Below are positions 35,101 through 56,100 of a stretch of 64,000 bases of DNA, piece by piece (position 1 is the first letter of the stretch; the number at the start of each line of letters is the position of its first letter). The position numbers and the translations under genes are program-made. The DNA lies in NCBI RefSeq assembly GCF_964204865.1, contig NC_135264.1:1240001-1304000 (forward strand). The letters run 5' to 3'. Source of the DNA: Styela clava. Lineage: Eukaryota. The notes beneath the pieces were generated by a model. The model ran no database searches. It saw only the letters and a program-made list of their open reading frames with translations, and was not told the DNA's origin.

Positions 35101-38100
35101 GAGGATATGTCCATATTGTTTACGTTTTGATTAGCTGTTCTCCGAAATCAGAATCGAGTATCCCTATGATATCATCTCTAATGTAAACGATTCGCTTGAA
35201 GAAAATTGTATTTTTAAAGTAAACGAACTAAGGCAACTATGAAGATTATATAACGAAAATGTACTAAGGTGTTGATTGAAACAACCCAGAAACTAATTTT
35301 TTCTCCTAATAAATAGTTGATTTCATTCCCAACGACTCTTTCTTATGAACAATTTTGGAGATGTTGTTCTCCGTTTTGGCGCCACACCCTGCAGCGCTTG
35401 GTGAAATCACGGCTAACATCGGCCTTGTCGTCATGGTTTCGGTGTGAAAATATCCTAGCAAAGCCAGTCATTAAAACACTTCAGTCCCTCAATGTCTTTG
35501 TTGTTCACCGAATTCTTTTCAAGGATTTGCGTTATCGATTTTTATGTTTTCTTGGATTTCACATTGGTCTTTCTATATTCATACTTGACGGACATTTTTG
35601 AGCTCTTGATCTAATGATATCGTCTTTGTCTACCTTGCTTAGGAAGCTTTCTTAAGGCGTATGCCAAAAATGAATTAGATAGCCAGGCAATATAATATAT
35701 ATACCTGCTCTATAAACAGTGGCCGTCACTACCGGGTAAATTTAGGTCAAATATCAAATTCATTTTGGAATACTTGTTTTTTCCTTTCTGTGATGATGTA
35801 ATCCTAACATCTGGTCAGATGGAATCAGTCTAGCCTCCGTTTCTGAACCTTCTGTGAAGTCATAATATATACCTTGCAATCGATGATCACATGTGTGAAC
35901 ATCACCGGCTTAATAGTTCATATAAGCTACAGCAAACGTTATAAATTATTGTCAAATGTCAAGCCATTTCTGAGACAGGAAGAATTTTTACACGGAAATC
36001 TGAGTCGGATTCAAAAAATGCTGTATTAGTTCCAGTTTAATCCAGTCTTTTATAACGCCACTAAGTTTCTTGTGAGTTGCGACGGTAATTATCTTTATTC
36101 TGGAAATCATTGCACTGTTCTCATTTCTCGGGCAAGATTCAGTTATGAATTTTAACATAGATTGAGTTGATTTAGTATTAATTTAAAGCTGGTCGAGTGG
36201 TCGAACCTGGTGTCTTCGACAGTAATTTGAAAAAGCTTCCAAACTTCTATTAAGAAAACAACCTCATTCATGATCGTTGAGTCTGAGCATACCTATACGG
36301 CACTACTCTGGACGGATTGCAGTACCATATTTACCCCAGTTCTTAATTTATAGCTAGTATTCATTTTAATTGCAGAGACCAATGTCAGGCAGCGATGATA
36401 CCTTAGGGGAGGCCTCCCCCAACCTCCCATGGAATCGTACACAACATAATTATCAGAACAAAGAGAATAATGAAGCGACGATTTTGAACGCTGCGGAAAG
36501 GGCAGTCATCCGTATCGCTGGTGAGTCACTTCGTATTTCATTCATTATTCATAAATTTGTCTCCGTGTTCAATGCTTTCAAGTATGTATGGTACAGTCTC
36601 TTAAGCTCTAGCTTGATGGAAATGGACATTTTTGATATTATCATGCAAAAAAAATACAATCTCTAAAGAACTAGAGCGGTATCTGATGAGCTGTGTCTTG
36701 AAGCTGAAACACCGAAATGTTTCTGAAGTTTTTATTTAAAAAAGCTTTCAGTCTGCGGCTTCTGCCAGAATACGTGACTCTGAAATTTATCTCAAAGTGG
36801 TAAATTATTCATGCGTTTTTGGATTTAAAAAAAAAGTATATTCCCTTCAATACTCCCGAGAGCGTCGTATCGCAATCTATGTTTAGCAATTTCTAAATGG
36901 GTACAAATCCCACAGTAATTCACTTTCCAACATCAGAGTTGGGATAAATATATAGTTTTAATAGTCATTCGACTGGCATCCTGCATAGCGGGCTTATTGG
37001 CCTGCCACAGTGATAGTGGCTTCGATTTTGCGGCGGCCACGCAAGCTCCTATCAACTGGGGTGTATCCAGTGGTGGGATTCAAATCTTTTGTCAGCCGGT
37101 TCCATCATACAACTGTCGAATTTTCAGGCGGTTCTGTTACAAAAAGTCATGTAATGCTAACCGGTTCGCTGATCTCATAAAATTCATAGAACCAGTGCGA
37201 ACCGGTTGAATCCCACCATTGGATGTATTGTATTAAAAAATTTCTTTTAATGTTCTCAAAGATCTCTAGCCCGAATCACCTCTCCGGATAGCGCATACCC
37301 GCTGCCCTAACCCGTAGTTGTAATTCTCAACAATATTGCCCGGTAATGATGGTAACCTCATTGAAATTCTAAAATCTGCTATCGACACTTGTGTTAGTAT
37401 TAATTAACAATGATTCGAAACGTGGACTATATATTGACGAAATAGAGGTTGAAAGCGAGATCATGCCTAATTAAGCATAATCTTGCCATTATAATCGCCA
37501 GAATTGATTATTGATTGAATGTAAAATGGATTTGTTCTTATTTTCCATATGTTAAAGCGGATTGTTGGTTTATAGTAGTACTCTGAATGAAGCGTGATCG
37601 CTTACATGTGAATTTAGCGGTTTTTAAATTTCAGTCTCTACCAGCTGTAATTTGGTCATATTAGAGACATAGCGTGTTTAAATACTTCCGGAAAATGCGC
37701 TATGAGTGATTTATAACTTGTCAATTGGAAATGTGATTTTTATGAATTAAAACGAGAGGATTGAGCGTGGGATAGCATATTTAGATAATTTTATGAAGTT
37801 TCTTTCGGTTTTTAGCATAAGCACAGTAACAATTTGTATCTTGCTCAGCATGCGTAGTAAGGATGAAAATTGATATAGCGAACAAACGACAAGTCTTTTT
37901 ATGTAATATAATATAATAAATCAAGAAAAATGCACTTTTCCCTGACGTGAACAATTTTGGGCTTCGGATTCTAATTTTGGTCCTATCCTGTTTTTACTTT
38001 TTGTTGAATGCGGCCACGGGTTTCACAACAGTGGCATACGGTTAGGGGCATTCAGGGATACCTATCAAAGAGGAGAAAAAAGTACCAAACTTTCATTGAG

Positions 38101-44100: not shown

Positions 44101-47100
44101 GAGAAATTTTACACCAGGTTTGAGATATCCGCGCACGCCCATTTTTTTGAATAACTTGCGCACTTTCGTGGCTCACACGATAGAATATCTCAAACTACAG
44201 AATTTGGTCTTCATCATTAACGTAGAAATATGCGGTTGGAGTATGTGCAAACAGAGTCCATGAGTCATGAGAATAGCCTATTAAAGAAGCACTAAGAATG
44301 TATTTATCGAATGCAGTTGGGTATCATGGACTTGTTCTGAACATTTCGAAATCCATGGTACATTATCTCAATTTATTAATACATTTAGGGGGACTATTAT
44401 TCGAGTTCAGATTTTGGGAAAGATTAGATATGCAGAATGTTTATAGACTAGTTGTTCAATGTAAGGCCGCATCATAATATGAAGTATATATTTTCTGAAT
44501 TGATCAATAGTAGCTTCTGGGGGCAACAATATATAGTTCGTTGGGGCTACTAATGTAATCGCGTAAATTTTTAATTCAATTAGGATCCTAATAATGCGAA
44601 ATAAAATCGCATACTTATTTGGAGTATCGAATTGAAAAATAACAATAATTTTGTATTTCTGCTTATAGAGAAGCTTATGGAAAGCTGGATATTGTCTAAG
44701 TGGCTCAGATAATGCGACATAATTTTTAGTTGTAGTCTGTGTCTGTTGATAACTAAAGCAAATCATGGGGTCACAATCAAGTAAAATCGAAGGTACATAA
44801 CCGGATCCGGATTGTGAGCTTTTGTAATTGTATCCAACTTCCATAGCCTCCGCCCAGGAAGCATCACCAACGGACCAAAATATAAATTTGTTTACTCATA
44901 TACAACTGGACTCCGAAGAACATATTCTCTTCGTTCCTCTCAAGGGAAAACTGAATTTGGAAGCCGACAGGCTACATTCTTTCACCGTAGACGATACTAG
45001 TCAGTACGGTAGTCAGTCGATTCCACTCAGCTGTCTAGAGGTTTTCCAAGTACGTCGTGTAGTCGTAGCAAATACGCCTGTTATACCTGTTGGCATATCT
45101 TGACTAGAAATTTGAAGGTTTCCATCGTGGTAGAGTCGGAATTATTTGAGATGGCTCAGCACTCTTATATTCGATCCTCAACTGGTCAGGACATCATGGC
45201 CAACGTGATAGTAAAATACTGTGGTAAGTACATTACAGAACTGTTGTTTTCAAGGGTGTCAAGGGTTTATGTGTGTAGGTGTGTCAGTGGATTTTGGGGG
45301 AAATCGGTTTCGAATTGTTTCCGCAATGTTCCCACTGTTACTGTTTCCCACGATACTCGGTGAGAGCATGTTTCGAGCTTTCAGGTGATAACCTTTTTAA
45401 ATATGACTAAATTTGCGCTAAAGCAATCTAACAAAAGTACACGGAATGTTGTTATGAACATCTGGCGAATGGGGAATACAGCCGGTTAGTTGGAAGTTTG
45501 TGTTTCTATTACATTTTTCTCATAAAATATACCAGCCGAAATTGTGATATATATGAACCATTGTCGAATTGCATTGATGTGATTCCGGGATGCAATAAAT
45601 TAACAGCGTGCACACAAACATATTCAACGTGAACTAAACTCTGTGCATTGCCTTAAAAATGTTTCCGCGACAGAACGGCGGAAATCTGTATTTCAATCAT
45701 CTCAATCATAAATGAAAACCACGAAGTCACGTTTCAACACATTATTATCTTTCGCCCTCTAACGGACGCTGACGGATTTTTTCGTGAATTTAATTCATTC
45801 CATTTACCATATTTCACACTATTAGGAGAAATTAGTTAACAAAGATGTTTTTCGCTCTATTCGCGCCAAATGTGTATAGCATTAATAAATATTTCAACAG
45901 ATCTATCTCATCGCTGGATATGCGTCGATTGCGTCGATATTTTATTTCCCCATATACGATACAGGGAAGTACAGAGTTAAATCTTGATTTGTGTATTCCG
46001 AGAAGACGCCTCTCATAAGAAGAAATCACGTTATTCATTCAAGCGTAGATTCATTTGAATTTGATCGGTTCAATTTTGTGGTTAATGTATAATAAAACAA
46101 AATTTATGTATAGTTCAGTGCATGGAATTTAATGTATAGTTTCGCGACGCTTGCTTTGTTGTTTCGAGAATCATGTGTGCTTTTTGGGCGTTTACTATAA
46201 CGTTGAAAGGTCACTTCTCCCGTTTCAAACTTTACTAACGAAAGTACTGTTGAATTGTAACGCCCAAGATTTCGTTTAGCCAGTGGAGAGTATGAATGGG
46301 GACCTAATGTATCGTATTGGCGTTATGATTTTTATAGCATAGCTGAAATCGCTCGCTTTTTTGGGAAATCCGCGTTAGGTTGGTTATTATTTTGGTAGGG
46401 GTGTTCAAAATGAATTCTTACGCAATCAAGATATTTCTTGGTACAATAGCACTATTACCATTTTTTTGACGATTTTCTGAAATATCAGTCTCTCTCGTAT
46501 AGTTGAATTGTCTTAAAACATTGTTTGGTCTTTAGAGCTGTGAGTCGTAAACGCAGCAAATGTATCTTTTATAGGTATTTATTGCAGAACATTTAAATAT
46601 GTAACACATTTCCATGTCAGTTCACTTACATGAGCTGCCTGTAGGCAATTTACTCGAAGAAATAAAAGAGCTTTATTATCCGCGCAGATATTTCGAGAAC
46701 ACTGCCGAACTATGTGTTTTGATTTTGCGTGTTCAACTGTTTCGAATTTCCACTACTCATTTATTTCATCTATTTAATAGTGAGAGAACGAAATGATGTT
46801 GTATTGTCGTATTTTATATCTCATTGAGAAGGAGCATATAGTTTTGAATAAGATACAAAGAGAAATCGCATAGATGATCCAAGATTCGACAGATAAAAAA
46901 AAACTTCAGTATTCAGTATAAATATTATTATATAACATTCCGCGGTCAAATTATGGCGGCTAGAAAAAATTTCACGAAAATTCAGTGTGCACGGGTTTTG
47001 CACAATGCGGCAAACTTATATACAGTAATCTTATTTTAAATACTTACGCGAATTAATTAAAACATACTCTCAGAAGTTTTATAATAATACCCATTTCTGC

Positions 47101-50100
47101 GATGCTATTTTTCGAATCTTTGCAGTTTTCGATTTAATAGGAGCAACAATTATTGTTTGTCAGACCAGGATTGCTCGGTAATTAATTCAATTGTCAGCAT
47201 TGTGTTTCAGGCAAACTAAAGAGTTCACGCACTGCAATAGGCATGTACCTATTTTAGTTCGGAAGTATGTAACGTGTTCTGTAGGTACATTGTGCGCTTG
47301 GGACTATAATAATATGCTTTCAAGTCTTGTTTGCTCTGGGTATCACAGTGTAAGAAATAAATTGGCTTGGATGTTGGTGGATGACATCGAGAAATCTTCT
47401 TGACCCACTTTTACTCGGAAAACCAAATGAGCTGAGCTCACAAGTGGTTAATTGTTATGTCAAAAATATAATAACGTCAAATAAAAAAACGTTTGAAGAA
47501 AATATCATTCATTCAATAATAATTTTCTTTCAATGTTTGATGATGAAATGTCCTTTAATTTCAGTCGAAGCACATGTTCGCTCTCACCCACGTAATATAT
47601 ATTTTGTCGCTGCAGCTATTCCAAATTGACTGTCGTTTAACATAGGTGGACATAAAAATTCCGCTTGTAAAATGATTGAGTGGTCACTAAGTATCACTTT
47701 TGTGTTTTTTAAATGTTTGCGGAATATATTATTATAAACACTGTTTAAAAGAGCACCGAATTAACATGAGGCCGAATGTATGTATAGCCGCACTACTATA
47801 TGTAGTGTTCGTTTGTTTCCAATAGCCCGCTGTAAACGATGAAAAATTTACTTCGCAATTTCAGTAAATCGAACAGAACTTCCAACATCTCGATAATACT
47901 GCTAGAAGGGAGAGAAAGAGACCGAGGGATATAAACCGGCTTCTGCTATTCGCGCTTAAGTACACACTACCCAATATAAAGTTAAGAACAGCTTAACTGG
48001 TGTCGATCCACTTCTTCGACGCCAAGTGGTGCCTGCTTTTATAAGGCCGATAAAAAGCTCCAGGACCGTTACATATTAGTATGGTTATTCAAGCGAACCT
48101 TCTGTGCGGCGTACACTGTTATTCGTTTTTTCAGATGAGGATAAAAAGTTTTGCGTGGATTTGGCATTCTATTTGGGAGCGACTTTTCGTTTAGGTCAAT
48201 CTGGTTTATTTTCAATGTCGCGAAATAGGATTTTGTGACATTTTCAAACTCGCAAGTTTTGCGTGGACGGTCACGTGGTTGTCTCGCTATTTTCATAATA
48301 GCAACTCTCAGGGCGCCATATCGATTTTTACCTTCAGAAGTTAAATAATGATACTGTAGAAAAAATTGTTTAATAATACAACTTTTTGTAATATTCAATA
48401 TGGAGTACCTCTTATCAATCGATATCGCCAGCTTTTTGTCCCTAATTCTTTACTACACTCCATACTTGGCGTTTTATAATTCCATATCACAATCCTGGCT
48501 GATGAGGCAGTTTACTCGGGAACTATGGACAAATTTCATTCAATTTTTTAAAGCGTGGTAGTGAATGTCAATAATTGTTCAGCAAGCAAAGAAGGAGATA
48601 ACCCTCTGCGAGTTTGTGAGAGAATAAAAAGAGAAAAAATTTGGAAAAACTGCTTTATGTTTCTTTTTCAAAAAGACATTACTAAAATGTGTTTTCGTAC
48701 CCGGCGTATTTTATCATCGTTTTCTTTTCGAGACGTGTAGCATTACTAAAATGACGATAGTTTACGTTTTGCGCCTAACTAACATATGAAGCGTGAAAGC
48801 TAGTTTTGCCTACGGGGCTTAGCGGACGACAGTGCCACGAGGCGTTATGGCGTTTCTTATAATAATATATCGTACCGGTATGATAGATTTCAGCAATAGT
48901 TTTAACAAATGCAATTGTAAGGCTTTTTACTGAGGAAATATGCAATTGAACAGTGAAAGGATTTTTTGATTGATGAACTCAGTGGTGTGATTGGACATGA
49001 ACTACAGATGAATCGGTTTACTTTCATTAAATACTCAGTTGCATTGTTGGTTTTGCATTTCTTGGCGTTGAAAGCCGTTTTGTTTAAGTTAGATGACTGG
49101 AAGAAACTTTCTTGTAACGTGATCTGGTCATTTATTGTTTCTTTAGGTTAGACGTAATGTTGATGCCGAAGGGCCATTTAGTGGCCATTTATCAATCACT
49201 TTTTGAAGACGGGGTTTGTGTAGCACAAAAAACAGTTCGCGGACCTCATGAGTATATTACCATAGGTAGTGGAGGAGCGCCTATACTCAATTTACACGTG
49301 GTAAAAGCTATGCAGTCACTGACTTCAAAGGGTGTTGTTAGACAAACATTTTGTTGGAGACATTACTACTGGACATTGACTGATTCTGGAATACAGTACC
49401 TTCGTGACTTTTTGCACCTTCCACCAGAAATTATACCCAATACTTTGAAACGTGGTGTTAGGGCGCCAACTGCTAGGTTAGGTGCAGGGAGAGGTCGAAC
49501 GCTACAGAAACAGTCGTCTGACGTTGCGGAACAAAGTAGGAACCAATATCGCGGAAAAGTGGATTCTCCCAGACCAGCATTTGGGCGTGGGAGAGATAAA
49601 GTCGCAGATGCCGGTGCGGGCTCAAGCGCCTCGTTTAGTTTCTATTCACGTCAATCGGGCATGGAATTTCGCGGTGGGTACAGAAGAGAGGAGCAAATGG
49701 AACAAGCAAACGCGGTAAACGGATATGCCGGATACAATGGGAACTGGCGTAGCGAAGGCGGTGAAGCGACAAAGTATACTAAGGAGAGAGAGGGATATAA
49801 AAGCGAATTACGTGATAATACCAAGCGCAATGAACCGTTCGGCCAGAAACGTGAAAACTTCGCAAAGAGAAGTTATCCGGAAGACGACAGACGGAAATAC
49901 ACGAGCACCGCAAGTCAAGATGGAAACAATGTAGACCAAAATTGGAGGCAGAAATCGCAAGATATCAGCTCAGAAACGAGAGATGTCAATCAAGTGACAT
50001 CGCCTGAAGAAATTGTTCAACCGACAACGTCGAACGAGAGCGGATCAACTTTCCTTAAAGTTTCCGAAACGAAAACACATTCGAGGAGTATTCACACAGG

Positions 50101-53100
50101 AGTAGGTGAAGAGGATTACCTTAGTCAAACCACTGTGGTGCAGTATTCAACATCAGTGCGTCAGGAATATACTCAGGAAGAAAAACAAGAATCTGGAAGG
50201 AGGGAGGAAGAGGAGGAGGAAGAAGAAGATATTGATATGTGGCGATCAAGAAGAGTAACTTCGGAAAATCCCGATTACAATGATAGCATTGAATCGAAAA
50301 TTGATGAAGGGAGAGGTGGAATACATTTTAAATTTAGGATTATTATTTCTGTTTCGCAACCTCTAGTGTCATTAGTTATACAAGCTTAATCAGAAAAGGT
50401 TGATTAGCACTATATGAATATATCAGTCGCACTAAACTTCACGTGGTACTTGCGAGAACATTTTAATTCTCTTGAAATTAAGGGTTTAGACGCTATGTAG
50501 TGAACTTTCGTTTCAAAATTGGCTACGCCCTTATTGAAACGTTTATTACTGCTTAGTGCGATGTGTGCATATTATTATAGAAAATGGTACTGGTCGATAG
50601 TTTATAGCCGATTTGCGATTTGTCAAAGCAGTCTTCATGGCTCTTCAGTAAATAACATTTCCTATGCAAACACCGTAAACACGTGTCAGGATAAGAACGC
50701 CACTAGTGCTCACTTTTAATCTTAATGTCCTACCACGTCATGTAAATGGTTTGTGTGTGGGAACATGGAACGTTCAATTTTTCAGTGTTGATTCAAACGT
50801 TAGCATAATCGCCGCGAGTGTTCCGTATATTACCTTTATAAGCAATGCTGTGGTTTGGTTGTCGTAAAATTCTTTTCGGGATTGGATGGATTTATAGTTT
50901 GTATATTTTGAAATTCTTAAAGCTGATTTTGGCTTTACTAAGAATTGAATTTATTTTGCTATGGGAATGAACCGAAATGGCTCGAGTTTAACGTTTCAAT
51001 GATGCCTACGGCATGTGCGTGTGGTCGATGTCAAAATCACTTTAATATGGATAGAAGTTGTCGTAAATCATATTTATAATATAACGCGACTGCTTCCCAT
51101 GGTTGGGTTTCTATTTCTTCAAAGTATCCACGATAAAAAGCTACTAATTTGCTGTCGTTTTTTGTAGTGTCATTATTGAAGAAACAAGTATAAGATTTCT
51201 ACTTATACGTGTCAAAACTTCATATTATTGTTCGATCACAACGGGCATTAATAACAAGCATTATCCTATATAAGATATCCCAGGCTAATCTCAATATGTT
51301 GAATTCATTGATATTTCGCCACAGGGTTCTGTAGGCTTGTGCGTTAATGAAACTCGATATCGACCTAGCTGAATTAGCAAGGTATAATATGAATGTTGTA
51401 TCAACACATAATAGAATGCTATTCCATGTATATGTATGAGTGACTCGAGACTAAAGAATTCCATTCGGGTGTATCGTAGCGTTCGAATCTCTTTATTTCG
51501 CATCGAAAAAACGATTAACTAGCAATTTTGAATGAGTTCATTTCAGTGCGATTTCATTTTTCAACCAACTTGTATTTTTTGGCTTTGAACTGATGACAAA
51601 GTCAACACTGTATAACACTTTGAATTGGACATGGAATTTGACGAACTTGATATAATTCATAGTTTCAACAAATTAATTTTTATTTCAGATGAACGCGACA
51701 AAGTACAGAAAAAGACATTTACAAAATGGATAAACAAGCATTTAGTCAAGGTATGTGTATATTTTTTAGATACTTTTGACATCGCAGTACATGAGCATAA
51801 ATTGGTTCAGTCGAATCTAATAAGAAATATTTTCAGTGTTATAGTTCCATCTTCGACTATAAGTATTTAAAATGACTGCATGGGATTGCGCAGCGACATT
51901 TATGGGAGGGATATAGTAGGGTAAACCTTGCATTTTATGCTCAAGTTTTAGAATTCCTAATAACCAACACCAACAACAAACGACCCGTATTATCGTAAAT
52001 TACCAGCTCTTTTATTATCTCGTTGAAGCCACTTTGTGAGCATAAATGTGTTGTAGACGTGAACAACTTTCCTCGGGCTATTGTATTACTTTATTTTTTT
52101 TTTAATGACTTACCTACCAACTGGTGTGTCAATGGTGGCTTTGCTTGGTGATTAAAATCCGCTGTATGGATCCATGTTTCGTAGGAGAAGAATACTTATT
52201 ATTGACTCACTTATGGACCAGCCATGAACGCATGATGACATTCGCGCCTGACCTTGATTGCTCATATATATCATTGCGGGTATACTCTTCTTTAAGGCGG
52301 CTATTTCATAGGACTTCTTTTCCTCAGCTACCTTCTGATAATGTGAAGACAAAATCGAAATCCCCGTTTTACGCAAGCCCTATTATTTGTAATTAACACA
52401 GTGCCTTTAGTGATTACTCGTTAATTGCCGATTCCGATGCATCGGTCGTACGTATTCGAAAACCGTTATCATGACACCAGCTACCAAATAACCCATAACC
52501 TCTTTTGTACTTCTGGATAAAAACGATTTTCGAAGTTCCCAGTTATGTGCAGTGCAATATTACATTATATTAATTTATTACAGACCCGAAGACAAGTGGA
52601 TAATTTATATGAAGATTTGAGAGATGGCCACAACTTGATCGCATTACTGGAAGTTTTATCTGGCGAAACCTTGGTGAGATTATTTTCGTTTTATGTAATC
52701 AGTTTAGTCGCTCAAACAAGCGTAAGTTTTGTATGGAATACTCTTATAGAGAATAGAATTAAATTTCCCGCCAAAACCATATTCGTTGCTTTGGATTATT
52801 GTTTGTTATTTCACTTCTGTATTAGGACAGAAATAATACGTTTTGATAAGATTCTCTCGTTTCTGCTTTTGTTGAAGGCATATAATTTTGTTGGAGTCCC
52901 AATTATTTTTTTGCGAAGCAGCGTGTTGTCGACTTTCCCATGGTTATAGATCTTCGCGTGGTCTTCGAAAAATCCAGCAAGTGACAACGTTTACTTTTAG
53001 AAATGGAAATTTTCATTAAGATGCCGATTTTGGACTTGAATATAGTTTTCATGAAATCGCGTGACAAAATATTGACGACTACTTCAGTCATTTACATTCT

Positions 53101-56100
53101 TTCAAATCTGCTTTCTACTTGATGAGTTTTAATTCATATTGAAAATTACCATCAGAATTTCAGTGAATGATTTCAATATTTTGACTATATAGGTTAACTT
53201 AAATAAATAACTGTTTGTCTGTTTGTTTCAATATTTCTTATTGGAATATTTTTTTCTCATATCCATTTAGTTTTCAATATCAGTTGAGGTCTCGTATGAT
53301 ATGGCAATTTGCAAAGAATGCCATCGCCCCACTTACGAAATTTGCCGCCAGAAATGCGCAGGACTGCATTTCTCTAATGATTTATTTAAATCAGTGAGTC
53401 GCCTGACAGTCTTGGGTTTCGTCTGTTTTACCTACTTTTGATTTGCTATGACGATTTGAAAATGATCCAGTGAAAGTTGAGCTATTACATGATTTAACAC
53501 ATAGCTATGATAATTGTGCGTGCGTGTGTGTGGCCCCTTTTACGCATGTTTTGTTTTGAACATGAAGCGTACTCAATTTGAAATTCAAGGTCTCGTTCTT
53601 GCGTGGTATGATGCCAGTGTGGTGGTTTGCGTAGGCGTGAATGTCAATTTCATCATAGGCGCGGTAATACCAAACCTTAATCCCGTCTACTAGAAATGCC
53701 AGGTCGTCAAAATAGGAAACCCTATATTTATCTAGTTGTTTTATTTAAAACCGATGGAATTAAATTCAAATTGTATTATGATAAATTGTATTATAATAAC
53801 ATTGTCAAACAGTATCACTCATGAGCAAAAATTAACATCATGCTTAAAATGGGTCGTTCATCCAATTTCGTAACCTAAACGAGTTTATCGCTACAAACCT
53901 TTCTTTCTGATATGCGTACAATTCATACACATCTAAGATTATCCTTACTAATACAAAAATTCCATTTCAAAGATTTTTAGCTTTTCTTTGGCTCTTTCTT
54001 TACTTTATTTTTCTTTATTTTTCATAATCCTTTTCCTCTTTTCTCTTTCTATCTACAAAGCCGCGCGAAGGAGACTACATGAATCAAATGCGTTTGGTAA
54101 GTCAACGAAACTACGCGGCATTATACCTGTGCAATAATATTAGACTAATTGTGCAGAAAGATGCCTTTATTCCTAATGCCTTCACTCATCTACTTTTCGT
54201 TTTCTATATTATACTTGACACTTGACTGGATCTTCTTGTTTGATATCATTTGCTCAGGGTAACTGTTGTCCAGGTCGATTAAATGGTTATAAATTACCAA
54301 TAGAAAAATGCTATAAAATTTTGTCAGACCAGAATTAAATGTAGATATCAAGTTTTAAACGAGGTACGATATATGTATAGTCATGTAAACTCTGTTACTT
54401 ATCGATATGTTTAATTTCAAATTAACGCGCATTTTTTAAGTGAAATGTTTATTTTTAGCCGAGAGAAAAGGGTCGAATGAGATTTCACAGACTTCAAAAT
54501 GTGCAGATAGCTTTAGACTATTTGAAGAAACGAAAGGTAAATTGCATTTTTCTTTAAGCACATACATTTTTGGGTAATTTTTTGGACTATACGTGATCTG
54601 GATAAATTTCCGAATTTCATATTTCAGCTTCGTCTTGTCAATATAAGAAATGACGACATAACAGATGGAAATCCGAAACTCACACTCGGACTTGTGTGGA
54701 CAATCATTCTTCATTTCCAGGCAAGTTATGTGACGTCATCTTACCTTCGGTCCATCTATGACTGCTGATATAATCGTCTTTTGTTATTTATTTGTATTAT
54801 CTGTAACTTTAATTTGTTGCTATTATATTAAAACAATTAATTTTCCTTTCAATTAGATTGAGGACATAGCCGTTGAAGGCGAAGATGATCTTTCTGCAAA
54901 ACAAGCCTTGTTATTGTGGGCTCAACGAAATATGGAAGGATACGACGATATCAGGGTCACCAATTTTACGTCTTCGTGGAGAGACGGAAAAGTTTTTAAT
55001 GCAATTTTACACAGGAATAGGTATTTTTCGTTTTTTTTTTGTATTAAAGAATGAAAATTTCATTTTTATATATTTCATTTTTTATTTTTCCAGACCTGAC
55101 CTCATTGACATGGATCAAGTACGTAAGTCAGACAACAAATCGAATCTAGAAAATGCGTTTTCAGCGCTCGAGAAGGAAGTTGCAGTGACAAGATTGCTGG
55201 ACCCAGAAGGTAGAGTACTTCAGCAAAGATTTATGAATGAAACCCAGCATTTACTTTTTCACCAACGCACGATAAGAGTTCGGTTTCAGCATGATTATAG
55301 ATAGTCGCCGATGTTATTTATATTCATATATTTTTAAAATTCCGATCTGATGTGTCATTTTGTTTATTTCAGCCTCGCCCTACCAATTGTCTCGTTTTGC
55401 ATTTTTGCTTACGAAATACTTTATAAGGTTAGTCAAGGTCATGTACGGAAATCTCTTATGTTTTTCGTATTTGTATACAGATGTTGATGTCGACAAACCA
55501 GACGAGAGATCGTTGATTACGTACGTTTCATCGTTGTACGACGCCTTTCCAAAAGTTCCTCCATTCCCGATTTCAATCACAGTCGAAGTATGTAGAGATA
55601 TTATGATTTTACTGATCTATTTTTTGACATCAATTCTAGAAAATAATAATAATAAAACCTACCAATACAGGGTTACTAGCAAGTTTTTATTTCTTCATGG
55701 ATATTCAATGCTGACCTTGTTGAACTTGTGACATACCAAAACCTGGTGTACTTAGGAATTGCGAATTATTTTTCAGGAATGGCAATTCACTTGGGAAGAA
55801 TATCGAATTCTTGTGACATCAATTCTAGAATGGATTCAGAAACAAATTGTCATTCTACGAAGACGTGAAGGCATACCATGTCAAACAGTGACAGAAGCCA
55901 AAAATTTAATTCACGAAATAAAACTTTTCCAAGAGAACGAGCTAGCTAGAAAAGAGGTGAGAACATCTGGCAATGAAGTATATTATATGTATATCGTTCG
56001 TGACTGTTGTTTGTTAAGTTGTTTGTTGATCATATTTGCTATATGAACATGAACTATGATTCAATATACATGTTATTTTAAAAAGGGTAAATATGCTTTC

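What the first reader, a model, noticed from the sequence alone, without database searches (positions are those of the whole stretch)
49157..50315. Near-full-length, intronless RPS10 copy used as a plakin first exon
Seen: similarity to ribosomal protein eS10 continues past the ~100-aa S10 domain. [16 protein letters not shown]...MEFRGGYRR mirrors the recalled RPS10 C-tail [23 protein letters not shown], including RG/RGG motifs. A further ~210 charged residues and a phase-1 donor follow. Known: vertebrate plectin isoform 1 has an S10 domain, with similarity largely limited to the N-terminal part. Inference: this is an exapted RPS10 retrocopy that preserves more of the original insertion. It either dates the S10-plakin fusion before the vertebrate split or is an independent capture, and it could tether RNA or ribosomes to the cytoskeleton.
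Basis: partly seen in the sequence, partly recalled or inferred. Interest (0 to 1): 0.8.

Follow-up and report, generated by a model that had tools for sequence, protein, structure and literature searches.

The report
Ribosomal-protein-derived first exon of sea-squirt plakin
A sea-squirt cytoskeleton-linker (plakin) gene makes a version of its protein whose head is an ancient, intron-free copy of ribosomal protein eS10, and it appears to be the same head that vertebrate plectin isoform 1 carries, so this odd fusion is probably older than vertebrates.

Summary
ORF 49157-50389 (+) has a Pfam S10_plectin domain (E 1.8e-32) and aligns with eS10 over residues 1-163, against 1-153 of 165.

RNA contigs from 4 of 4 runs (4 studies) splice 50315|51689 (GT..AG) onto the exon that begins (D)[13 protein letters not shown]. 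None runs into the intron. The exon is not cis-spliced at its 5' end. It carries a tunicate-type spliced leader at acceptor 49146|49147.

The genome's own RPS10 has three introns inside the region that this exon covers without any.

Four unnamed relatives conserve the exon: S10 domain 71% identity, eS10 tail 44%, linker 20%, last 32 residues 60%.

It is most likely the orthologue of vertebrate plectin exon 1:
- it sits at the same junction residue;
- it follows a plectin-1c-type exon;
- it shares derived residues;
- it has a G[RK]GR motif found in tunicates, lampreys and a chimaera but in 0 of 159 canonical eS10.

ML trees and AU tests alone do not decide this. Lamprey plectin keeps the eS10 tail too, so near-full-length retention is not unique. 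Function is untested.

The parts
49145..49146 (+). AG of a trans-splice acceptor (..tttctttAG|GTTAGACGTAATG)
   Evidence: RNA contigs of X1, X6 and X13 begin at 49145. X6 carries 19 further letters that lie nowhere in the window. Those letters occur 730 times in the genome and match the 'Chordata 1' spliced-leader consensus in Table 1 of PMC3795323.
49147..49156 (+). 10-nt 5' UTR between the spliced leader and the ATG
49157..49453 (+). eS10 N-terminal (S10_plectin, winged-helix type) domain, residues 1-99
   Evidence: Pfam E 1.8e-32. eS10 chains E 2.5e-36. 71% mean pairwise identity and 49 of 99 invariant columns among 5 orthologues. No difference among RNA contigs of 4 runs here.
49454..49687 (+). 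Homologue of the eS10 C-terminal tail, residues 100-177 ([36 protein letters not shown], 9-residue insert, FRGGYRR)
   Evidence: shuffles, hhalign E 1.1e-6. 44% identity among orthologues with 13 of 78 columns invariant. Not found by a tail-only PDB search.
49688..50218 (+). Variable, acidic, Ser/Thr/Gln-rich linker, residues 178-354
   Evidence: 20% mean identity and 0 of 177 invariant columns. 10 of the 11 differences among RNA contigs lie in residues 178-386 (6 non-synonymous, 4 synonymous). No Pfam family above cut-off.
50219..50315 (+). Conserved end of the exon, residues 355-386 (EEDx[19 protein letters not shown]), plus the first base (G) of the split Asp codon. Phase-1 donor G|GTGGAA.
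   Evidence: 60% identity with 12 of 32 columns invariant. Junction in 4 of 4 runs.
50316..51688 (+). Intron (GT..AG, 1373 nt)
   Evidence: Skipped in contigs of X1, X3, X6 and X13. Depth is 0 in all four runs across 50349-51530.
51689..51750 (+). Common exon 2: (D)[20 protein letters not shown], the start of calponin-homology domain 1
52584..52675 (+). Common exon 3: [30 protein letters not shown] (CH1)
   Evidence: Junction 51750|52584 in 4 of 4 runs. Translation.
36382..36520 (+). Alternative upstream first coding exon of plectin-1c/MACF1 type (..[13 protein letters not shown]). It has a phase-1 donor and also joins 51689.
   Evidence: Sequence. Loose ends CCGTATCGCT at 51688 in X1 and X13. 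blastp to Pogona plectin isoforms X7/X8, residues 16-65, E 3.7e-6 in a small database.

Best explanation
This is an alternative first coding exon of the single plakin (plectin/MACF1/dystonin-type) gene of a tunicate, and it receives a spliced leader by trans-splicing. It descends from a processed (intron-free) copy of the ribosomal protein gene RPS10 that landed in the 5' region of the plakin gene. That copy lost its stop codon and acquired a phase-1 donor that joins the exon starting (D)ERDKVQKK.

Most likely this capture happened once, before tunicates and vertebrates split. On that reading the exon is the orthologue of exon 1 of vertebrate plectin (isoform P1).

The product is a plakin isoform built from four parts ahead of the actin-binding domain:
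- an eS10 winged-helix domain;
- the RG/RGG-rich eS10 tail;
- a freely evolving acidic spacer;
- a conserved 32-residue piece directly before the actin-binding domain.

Inferred, not shown: the head works as an isoform-specific docking module. It would decide where in the cell this plakin isoform anchors filaments, as the P1 head does in vertebrates. There it is perinuclear and binds Siah, endophilin B2 and beta-synemin according to the review PMC8468861.

Shown here: sequence homology, absence of the parental introns, expression and splicing, and conservation.
For: Homology:
- Pfam S10_plectin matches with E 1.8e-32.
- eS10 aligns over 1-163 against 1-153 of 165 residues.
- The tail is significant by shuffles and hhalign.

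Retrocopy origin:
- The genome holds one canonical RPS10 on another contig with 4 coding exons.
- The plakin exon spans all three of its intron positions without an intron.

Use:
- Junction 50315|51689 (GT..AG) is seen in 4 of 4 runs from 4 studies.
- No contig enters the intron or reaches stop 50389.
- A spliced leader lies on the 5' end in X6.

Host gene: the downstream exons match MACF1 and plectin CH domains best (E 4.7e-16 and 2e-15, against 1.6e-8 for dystrophin).

Selection:
- Four orthologous ORFs, P0001-P0004, are 41-50% identical overall.
- By region, identity is 71% in the S10 domain, 44% in the tail, 20% in the linker and 60% in the last 32 residues.
- There are 0 differences in residues 1-100 among RNA contigs, against 10 in residues 178-386.

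Orthology with plectin exon 1:
- Seven Pogona plectin N-termini all diverge directly before DERDRVQKKTF. That is the residue split by the junction here.
- A 1c-type exon lies upstream of the S10 exon. The review PMC8468861 says variant numbers follow genome position, with 1c as variant 1 and isoform 1 as variant 6.
- Shared derived states at columns invariant in 28 of 28 canonical eS10: R8L (plectin 18/18, tunicate 3/4), Q60T (17/18, 4/5) and E18D (14/18, 4/5). There are 0 shared derived residues with the genome's own eS10.
- G[RK]GR after LHLPPEIVP occurs in 5/5 tunicate sequences, 0/159 canonical, 0/79 other and 5/147 plectin-type. Those five are exactly the three lamprey and two chimaera sequences.
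- A KV[DE].PR insert after YR is shared with the chimaera.
- In the second tree, canonical eS10 (22 rows) form one side of a branch (89/93, 84% of bootstrap trees). The two plakin groups sit together on the other side.
Against: - The first tree (54 rows, including three partial rows for the own eS10 exons) did not join tunicate and vertebrate plakin S10. It placed own eS10 exon 3 next to the tunicate plakin clade (93/73). That row fills 22% of the columns and was partly misaligned.
- AU tests reject neither the joint plakin clade (dlnL 1.47, p 0.277) nor the rival clade of plectin S10 plus vertebrate eS10 (dlnL 4.18, p 0.225).
- The 89/93 branch is not at the 'starred' level. It joins two long branches, so long-branch attraction is possible.
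- Single derived residues can recur. An acanthocephalan eS10 (P0076) has D18 and T60, and a fungal one (P0124) has L8 and D18.
- No full-length tunicate canonical eS10 was in any tree. Joining the own exons was left out, and none was listed.
- Spliced-leader letters were seen in 1 of 4 runs only.
- Nothing here tests the function.
Confidence: 0.8

Rival explanations
1. Independent capture. Tunicates and vertebrates each inserted an RPS10 retrocopy into the 5' region of their plakin gene, and the shared residues are convergent changes after release from the ribosome.
For: - Tree 1 does not join the two plakin groups and places own eS10 exon 3 beside the tunicate plakin clade (93/73).
- The AU test does not reject plectin S10 plus vertebrate eS10 as a clade (p 0.225).
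- Convergent D18/T60 or L8/D18 occur in divergent eS10 of an acanthocephalan and a fungus.
- RPS10 mRNA is abundant, so retrocopies are frequent raw material (general knowledge).
Against: - It needs the same donor gene, the same host gene, the same place (after the 1c-type exon, before exon 2) and the same junction residue twice.
- The G[RK]GR motif and the KV[DE].PR insert are shared with the earliest-branching vertebrate plectins and are absent from 159 canonical eS10.
- There are 0 shared derived residues with the genome's own eS10.
- Tree 2 separates all canonical eS10 from both plakin groups (89/93).
- The genome holds no other RPS10 retrocopy (3 matches in all).
Confidence: 0.12
2. The head keeps an eS10-like activity. 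It binds RNA or the 40S subunit (winged helix plus RG/RGG tail) and so ties mRNPs or ribosomes to the plakin-organised cytoskeleton. This is a rival about function, compatible with the origin given above.
For: - The eS10 tail, including GRGR and FRGGY, is kept in 5 of 5 tunicate sequences and in lampreys.
- The S10 domain has 49 of 99 invariant columns.
- RG/RGG motifs commonly bind RNA, and Pfam's description of the domain suggests RNA binding (both recalled, not from a call).
Against: - 25 of 98 columns that are conserved in canonical eS10 are changed in the tunicate copies, including R8, E18 and Q60, which are invariant in 28 of 28 eS10.
- The second Lys of the DKK motif is hydrophobic in 4 of 5.
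- The review of plectin isoforms (passages seen) lists protein partners for the P1 head and has 0 occurrences of 'ribosom'.
Confidence: 0.15
3. A separate small gene: a stand-alone eS10 paralogue ending at stop 50389 that merely lies inside a plakin intron.
For: The ORF is closed by a stop at 50389, 24 codons after the donor.
Against: All contigs that cover the exon end at 50313/50315 and continue at 51687/51689. Depth is 0 in 50349-51530 in 4 of 4 runs. Conservation in the orthologues stops exactly at ..IDEGRG.
Confidence: 0.02

Closest known systems
Exon 1 of vertebrate plectin (isoform 1, P1)
   Same: - A single exon encodes an S10_plectin domain at the very N-terminus.
- It is one of several alternative first exons joined to the exon that starts (D)[12 protein letters not shown].
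- It shares derived residues and motifs.
- Lamprey keeps the eS10 tail as well.
- Teleost and anuran forms also have a long spacer before the CH domain.
   Different: - The host is the single tunicate plakin gene, not one of the vertebrate paralogues.
- It is trans-spliced to a spliced leader.
- It lacks the MVAG extension before MLMP seen in most of the vertebrate plectin-type sequences.
- It has its own 209-residue acidic spacer and a conserved IESKIDEGR end, for which I saw no vertebrate counterpart in the sequences printed.
- There is a 9-residue insert between F.F and FRGGY.
Ribosomal protein eS10 (RPS10)
   Same: Homologous over essentially the whole length of eS10, 1-153 of 165. The order of motifs is the same down to RGGY.
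   Different: - It has no stop after the RGG tail and is fused to a plakin.
- It has no introns, whereas the own RPS10 has three.
- 25 of 98 conserved eS10 columns are changed.
- It is therefore not expected to serve as the ribosomal protein. The genome has a normal RPS10.
Retrocopy-derived fusion exons such as TRIM5-CypA (recalled, not from a call)
   Same: A processed copy of a housekeeping gene landed in another gene and became a coding exon that gives the host protein a new binding head or tail.
   Different: - Here the retrocopy supplies the N-terminus through an alternative first exon.
- It is hundreds of millions of years old.
- It has been kept across two subphyla.
Alternative N-termini of spectraplakins (MACF1, dystonin, Drosophila Shot; recalled) and plectin 1c
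   Same: An array of alternative first exons feeds one common exon 2. The window also has the [13 protein letters not shown] exon, which matches Pogona plectin isoforms X7/X8.
   Different: None of those heads derives from a ribosomal protein.

Membership tests
Pfam PF03501 S10_plectin | Match to the family HMM above the curated cut-off | tested here: met
   111.7 bits against a cut-off of 26.9. Residues 3-99 match profile positions 1-91 of 93.
Functional ribosomal protein eS10 | Stand-alone protein of about 150-180 residues that ends after the RGG tail | tested here: not met
   The frame stays open for 209 more residues and is spliced to the CH domain exons.
Functional ribosomal protein eS10 | Keeps the residues that are invariant in canonical eS10 | tested here: not met
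   25 of 98 conserved columns are derived in the tunicate plakin copies, including R8, E18 and Q60, which are invariant in 28 of 28 canonical rows.
Processed retrocopy (retrogene-derived exon) | Lacks the introns of the parental gene, which exists elsewhere with introns | tested here: met
   The own RPS10 on contig C4 has coding exons at L003 1495-1635, 2281-2455 and 2985-3109, and at L002 2504-2539. The plakin exon is continuous across all three boundaries.
Processed retrocopy (retrogene-derived exon) | Poly(A) remnant and target-site duplications | not tested
   Not looked for. At this age (41-50% protein identity between orthologues) they are not expected to survive.
Plectin isoform-1-type first exon | Host gene is a plakin (CH-CH actin-binding domain followed by the plakin domain) | tested here: met
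   The exon at 54598-54738 matches MACF1 (E 4.7e-16) and plectin (E 2.1e-15) CH domains best. The exon at 55762-55965 matches the MACF1 (E 0.0022) and plectin (E 0.19) plakin-domain chains weakly.
Plectin isoform-1-type first exon | Joins the common exon at the residue before ERD.VQKKTF | tested here: met
   Junction G|AT GAA CGC in 4 of 4 runs. Seven Pogona plectin N-termini diverge at the same residue. The codon phase in vertebrates was not testable with these tools.
Plectin isoform-1-type first exon | Lies downstream of the 1c-type first exon | tested here: met
   The 1c-type exon is at 36382-36520 and the S10 exon at 49147-50315. The vertebrate order is taken from a passage of PMC8468861, not from a genome.
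Plectin isoform-1-type first exon | Shares derived characters with vertebrate plectin S10 against canonical eS10 | tested here: met
   R8L, Q60T, E18D and a one-residue insert near position 29. G[RK]GR occurs in 5/5 tunicate sequences, in lampreys and a chimaera, and in 0/159 canonical eS10.
Plectin isoform-1-type first exon | Groups with vertebrate plectin S10 in a tree | tested here: inconclusive
   Tree 2: canonical eS10 against both plakin groups, 89/93. Tree 1: the groups are not joined. AU p is 0.277 for the joint clade and 0.225 for the rival clade.
SL trans-spliced mRNA (tunicate) | Leader sequence on the 5' end of the transcript, joined at an AG acceptor and not encoded nearby | tested here: met
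   A 19-nt loose end before 49145 in X6 (1 of 4 runs). It has 0 matches in the window and 730 in the genome. It is identical to part of the 'Chordata 1' consensus.

The most novel reading that the evidence does not exclude
The eS10-derived head has kept an RNA- or 40S-binding activity for more than half a billion years. On this reading the S10 isoform of the chordate plakin (tunicate plakin, lamprey and jawed-vertebrate plectin P1) physically anchors ribosomes or mRNPs to the filament network near the nucleus. Constraint on the RG/RGG tail in tunicates and lampreys would be the trace of that activity.
Probability: 0.12. Interest if true: 0.8.

Novelty: new member of a known kind. Interest (0 to 1): 0.42.

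Why it matters
The N-terminal head of plectin isoform 1 is the longest isoform-specific piece of plectin. Its resemblance to a ribosomal protein is recorded in the Pfam family name, yet in five searches of the paper library I found no paper on where it came from or what the fold does.

A transcribed, conserved counterpart in a tunicate does three things:
- It dates the RPS10-plakin fusion to before the tunicate-vertebrate split, and so before the duplications that gave plectin, MACF1 and dystonin.
- It shows which parts are under selection: the domain, the RG/RGG tail and the piece next to the actin-binding domain, but not the spacer.
- It offers a simple chordate with a single plakin gene in which the function of the head can be tested.

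It is also a clean, very old example of a retrocopy turned into an alternative first exon.

Tried and rejected
1. A stand-alone eS10 paralogue ending at 50389 is rejected by the RNA contigs.

2. An upstream cis exon for the 19 loose letters is rejected. There are 0 matches in the window and 730 in the genome, and the letters match a published spliced-leader consensus.

3. In-frame entry from the 1c-type exon into acceptor 49147 is rejected by reading the sequence. A phase-1 donor gives G+GT then TAG.

4. Recent retrocopy or gene conversion with the own RPS10 is rejected. There is only local, moderate similarity exon by exon and 0 shared derived residues.

5. The tail-only search of PDB sequences found nothing. 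I then used shuffles and hhalign.

6. Likelihood trees and two AU tests did not settle single against double capture.

7. The search for long S10-bearing proteins with lamprey P0048, residues 1-200, found 282 hits. The 120 listed are all vertebrate plectins. Hits 121-282 were not shown, so an annotated tunicate or amphioxus protein could be among them.

8. The profile search with the five tunicate exons returned only P0001-P0004 as relatives with E-values far ahead of the rest: by BLASTP they cover 98-100% of the query for three and 45% for P0004, then come a fish protein and ordinary eS10.

9. The canonical eS10 search listed no tunicate eS10 among its best 120 of 1732. As a result, no tree holds a full-length tunicate eS10.

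10. One search translated the 1c-type exon in the wrong frame, which was my slip. One search repeats it correctly.

11. Paper searches found nothing on the origin of the plectin S10 exon or on an S10-plakin in tunicates. In one search, 160 papers held at least 3 of the 4 terms, and the 20 listed show 0 occurrences of 'S10 domain'. This covers the held library only, and subscription papers are not in it.
   - I saw passages of PMC3795323, PMC9145010, PMC8468861 and PMC8782857, and otherwise only search listings.
   - The species behind the 'Chordata 1' leader are in a supplementary table of PMC3795323 that I could not see.

12. The spliced plakin model and the own RPS10 were handled exon by exon. 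The joined step was left out throughout, so the own eS10 entered tree 1 as three separate partial rows.

13. Depth figures were not used to rank isoforms.

Full report
WHAT IS THERE. The + strand ORF 49157-50389 (410 aa) starts MLMPKGHL. It matches Pfam S10_plectin over residues 3-99 (E 1.8e-32, 111.7 bits against a cut-off of 26.9). Against the sequences of solved structures, all 60 hits shown (of 64 matched) are eS10 chains. The 165-residue mammalian-type chain aligns with query 1-163 over its residues 1-153 (E 2.5e-36).

The tail was tested on its own.
- A search with residues 101-182 alone finds no eS10 at E<=10.
- The Smith-Waterman score of the tail against each of 28 canonical eS10 tails exceeds 300 shuffles at p<=0.01 in 28 of 28 (median z 5.2).
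- A profile-profile comparison of five tunicate tails with 28 canonical tails gives 91% probability and E 1.1e-6 over 39 columns.

After FRGGYRR come 209 residues with 36% charged residues, net acidic. No Pfam family matches them above its cut-off.

IT IS EXPRESSED AND SPLICED AS PROPOSED. The one reads call laid contigs of four runs from four studies on 47000-52900.
- In 4 of 4 runs a contig covers 49145-50313 and continues at 51687. With the tool's 'cut +2' this is 50315|51689, GT..AG.
- Depth is 0 in all four runs across 50349-51530. This also shows that these runs, whose kind was only guessed, are RNA.
- No contig reaches stop 50389.
- The next junction, 51750|52584, is also seen in 4 of 4.

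The codon split by the first junction is G|AT (Asp). The reading then continues [20 protein letters not shown] and [30 protein letters not shown], which is the start of a calponin-homology domain. A later exon (54598-54738) matches the CH domains of MACF1 (E 4.7e-16) and plectin (E 2.1e-15) far better than dystrophin (1.6e-8). The exon at 55762-55965 weakly matches the MACF1 (E 0.0022) and plectin (E 0.19) plakin-domain chains. I searched these exons one by one. The joined model was not built or searched.

THE 5' END. Contigs of X1, X6 and X13 begin at 49145, the AG of ..tttctttAG|GTTAGACGTAATG. X6 carries 19 more letters. These have 0 matches in the window but 730 in the genome, with 0 for the reversed control. 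In the ten loci fetched they are followed by AG in 9 of 10, and then by unrelated sequence. The 19 letters plus AG are part of the 25-nt 'Chordata 1' spliced-leader consensus in Table 1 of PMC3795323 (passage seen). The species list is in a supplement I could not open.

Among chordates only tunicates trans-splice (general knowledge). Earlier notes of this scan call the genome Styela clava. I did not verify the species. So the S10 exon is the first coding exon of a trans-spliced mRNA with a 10-nt UTR. Leader letters were seen in 1 of 4 runs. An X3 contig runs unspliced to 49132.

A second first exon, 36382-36520 (..[13 protein letters not shown], phase-1 donor), also joins 51689. The loose end CCGTATCGCT is seen at 51688 in X1 and X13. 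This exon matches residues 16-65 of Pogona plectin isoforms X7/X8 (E 3.7e-6 in a small database).

RETROCOPY ORIGIN. A whole-genome scan with PF03501 gives three matches: this exon and two exons of one gene on contig C4. That gene is a normal RPS10 with four coding exons. These are L003 1495-1635, 2281-2455 and 2985-3109, and L002 2504-2539, ending ..TATFEF|RGGYGRGRGAP*. The plakin exon is continuous across all three intron positions.

It is not a recent copy. Exon-by-exon alignments are only moderately similar. At columns conserved in canonical eS10, the tunicate plakin copies share 0 derived residues with the own eS10.

CONSERVATION. A search of 1.84 billion representatives gave 1194 hits at E<=0.001. 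The four best, P0001-P0004 (318-431 aa, unnamed Logan contigs), align over the whole exon at 41-50% identity. A profile search found no further full-length relatives.

Mean pairwise identity by region:

| Region | Identity | Invariant columns |
|---|---|---|
| S10 domain | 71% | 49 of 99 |
| eS10 tail | 44% | 13 of 78 |
| Linker | 20% | 0 of 177 |
| Last 32 residues (EEDx[18 protein letters not shown]) | 60% | 12 of 32 |

Conservation stops at the donor. Among the RNA contigs there are 11 single-base differences: 0 in residues 1-100, 1 synonymous in 101-177, and 6 non-synonymous plus 4 synonymous in 178-386.

RELATION TO VERTEBRATE PLECTIN. Many of the 150 listed hits are long proteins that start MVAGMLMP.. 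with the match at residues 5 onward. The named ones include lamprey plectin-like (P0048, 6670 aa), Pogona plectin and piranha plectin b. A search with P0048 residues 1-200 found 282 long proteins, and the 120 listed are all vertebrate plectins.

The lamprey exon keeps the eS10 tail (..GAGRGRG..SAQSFEFRGGY..) and reaches the CH domain at residue 200. Teleost and frog plectins have about 900-2000 residues between S10 and CH. So 'S10 plus tail' and 'S10 plus long spacer' both exist in vertebrates.

Evidence for one origin:
- Same junction residue. Seven Pogona N-termini diverge directly before DERDRVQKKTF.
- Same order, with the 1c-type exon upstream (review passage).
- Derived states at columns invariant in 28 of 28 canonical eS10: R8L (plectin 18/18, tunicate 3/4), Q60T (17/18, 4/5) and E18D (14/18, 4/5).
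- A one-residue insert near position 29.
- G[RK]GR after LHLPPEIVP in 5/5 tunicate sequences, 0/159 canonical, 0/79 other and 5/147 plectin-type. Those five are the three lamprey and two Callorhinchus sequences.
- A KV[DE].PR insert shared with Callorhinchus.

Trees:
- Tree 1 (54 rows, including three partial own-exon rows) gives each plakin group as a clade (100/98 and 100/96) but not as sisters. It puts own exon 3 beside the tunicate clade (93/73).
- The AU test does not reject the joint clade (p 0.277).
- Tree 2 (40 rows, chimaera added, no partial rows) puts all 22 canonical eS10 on one side of a branch (89/93).
- The AU test does not reject plectin S10 plus vertebrate eS10 either (p 0.225).
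- Single residues can converge, as in an acanthocephalan and a fungal eS10.

I weigh the positional identity and the multi-residue motifs more heavily than the unresolved trees, and put one capture at about 0.8-0.85.

HOW IT PROBABLY WORKS. Shown: an alternative, trans-spliced first exon puts an eS10-derived winged-helix domain, an RG/RGG tail, a free spacer and a conserved pre-ABD motif in front of the plakin actin-binding domain.

Inferred: like other plakin first exons, it sets where this isoform docks. For vertebrate P1 the review PMC8468861 (passages) reports a 180-residue specific sequence, binding sites for Siah, endophilin B2 and beta-synemin, and a perinuclear location. It does not mention ribosomes (0 occurrences).

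An RNA or 40S-binding role remains possible but untested. 25 of 98 conserved eS10 columns have changed, which argues against simple occupation of the eS10 site. From memory, the DKK motif in the eS10 tail holds the lysines ubiquitinated by ZNF598. Here the second is hydrophobic in 4 of 5.

NOVELTY. This is a new member of a known kind: the tunicate counterpart of plectin exon 1. Five paper searches found nothing on it in the held library. PMC9145010 (passage) only states that the human-like plakin derives from the common ancestor of tunicates and vertebrates. Whether the public annotation of this genome already models the isoform could not be checked.

Noticed in passing
G000, e.g. L008/L009 (C1:13883919 and 13890238), L010/L011, L012/L013: The spliced-leader 19-mer occurs 730 times in the genome. 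Many copies come in same-strand pairs about 6.3-6.5 kb apart with identical flanks, as if carried in the terminal repeats of a mobile element or in retroposed leader-bearing copies.
   Followed up: partly
window 36382-36520: A plectin-1c/MACF1-type first coding exon (..[13 protein letters not shown]) with its own acceptor (ttgcag|AGACC) and a phase-1 donor. Its junction to 51689 shows as loose ends in X1 and X13.
   Followed up: partly
window 49640-49670 (residues about 163-171): The tunicate copies have a 9-residue insert (YSRQSGME-like, ending EF) between F.F and FRGGY. This is exactly where the last intron of the canonical RPS10 lies. Lamprey plectin has no insert there.
   Followed up: no
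P0401 / P0036 (Callorhinchus milii, XP_042187634.1): A 169-172-residue protein named '40S ribosomal protein S10a-like' starts MVAGMLMPL.. and carries the plectin-type derived residues. It looks like the plectin S10 first exon called as a separate gene.
   Followed up: partly
P0087, P0363, P0349, P0285, P0325, P0292: Teleost and anuran plectin isoforms with the S10 head have about 900-2000 residues between the S10 domain and the CH domain. Teleosts share a conserved end there (..DDLDYDVLEEL..WDHSL.EPE.KTFPNF.ED).
   Followed up: no
L003 1480-1500 (own RPS10): The canonical RPS10 also has an acceptor directly before its ATG (tttcag|GATG). It probably receives the spliced leader or a short 5' exon as well.
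   Followed up: no
window 49409: One X3 contig (depth 4.7 of 14.5) lacks one base inside the S10 domain. The other three runs do not show it. It is probably an assembly error or a rare allele.
   Followed up: no
P0076 (Neoechinorhynchus agilis), P0124 (Tilletia indica): Divergent canonical eS10 proteins of an acanthocephalan and a fungus carry some of the same substitutions (D18/T60, L8/D18) as the plakin-type S10. This is a warning that single sites converge.
   Followed up: partly
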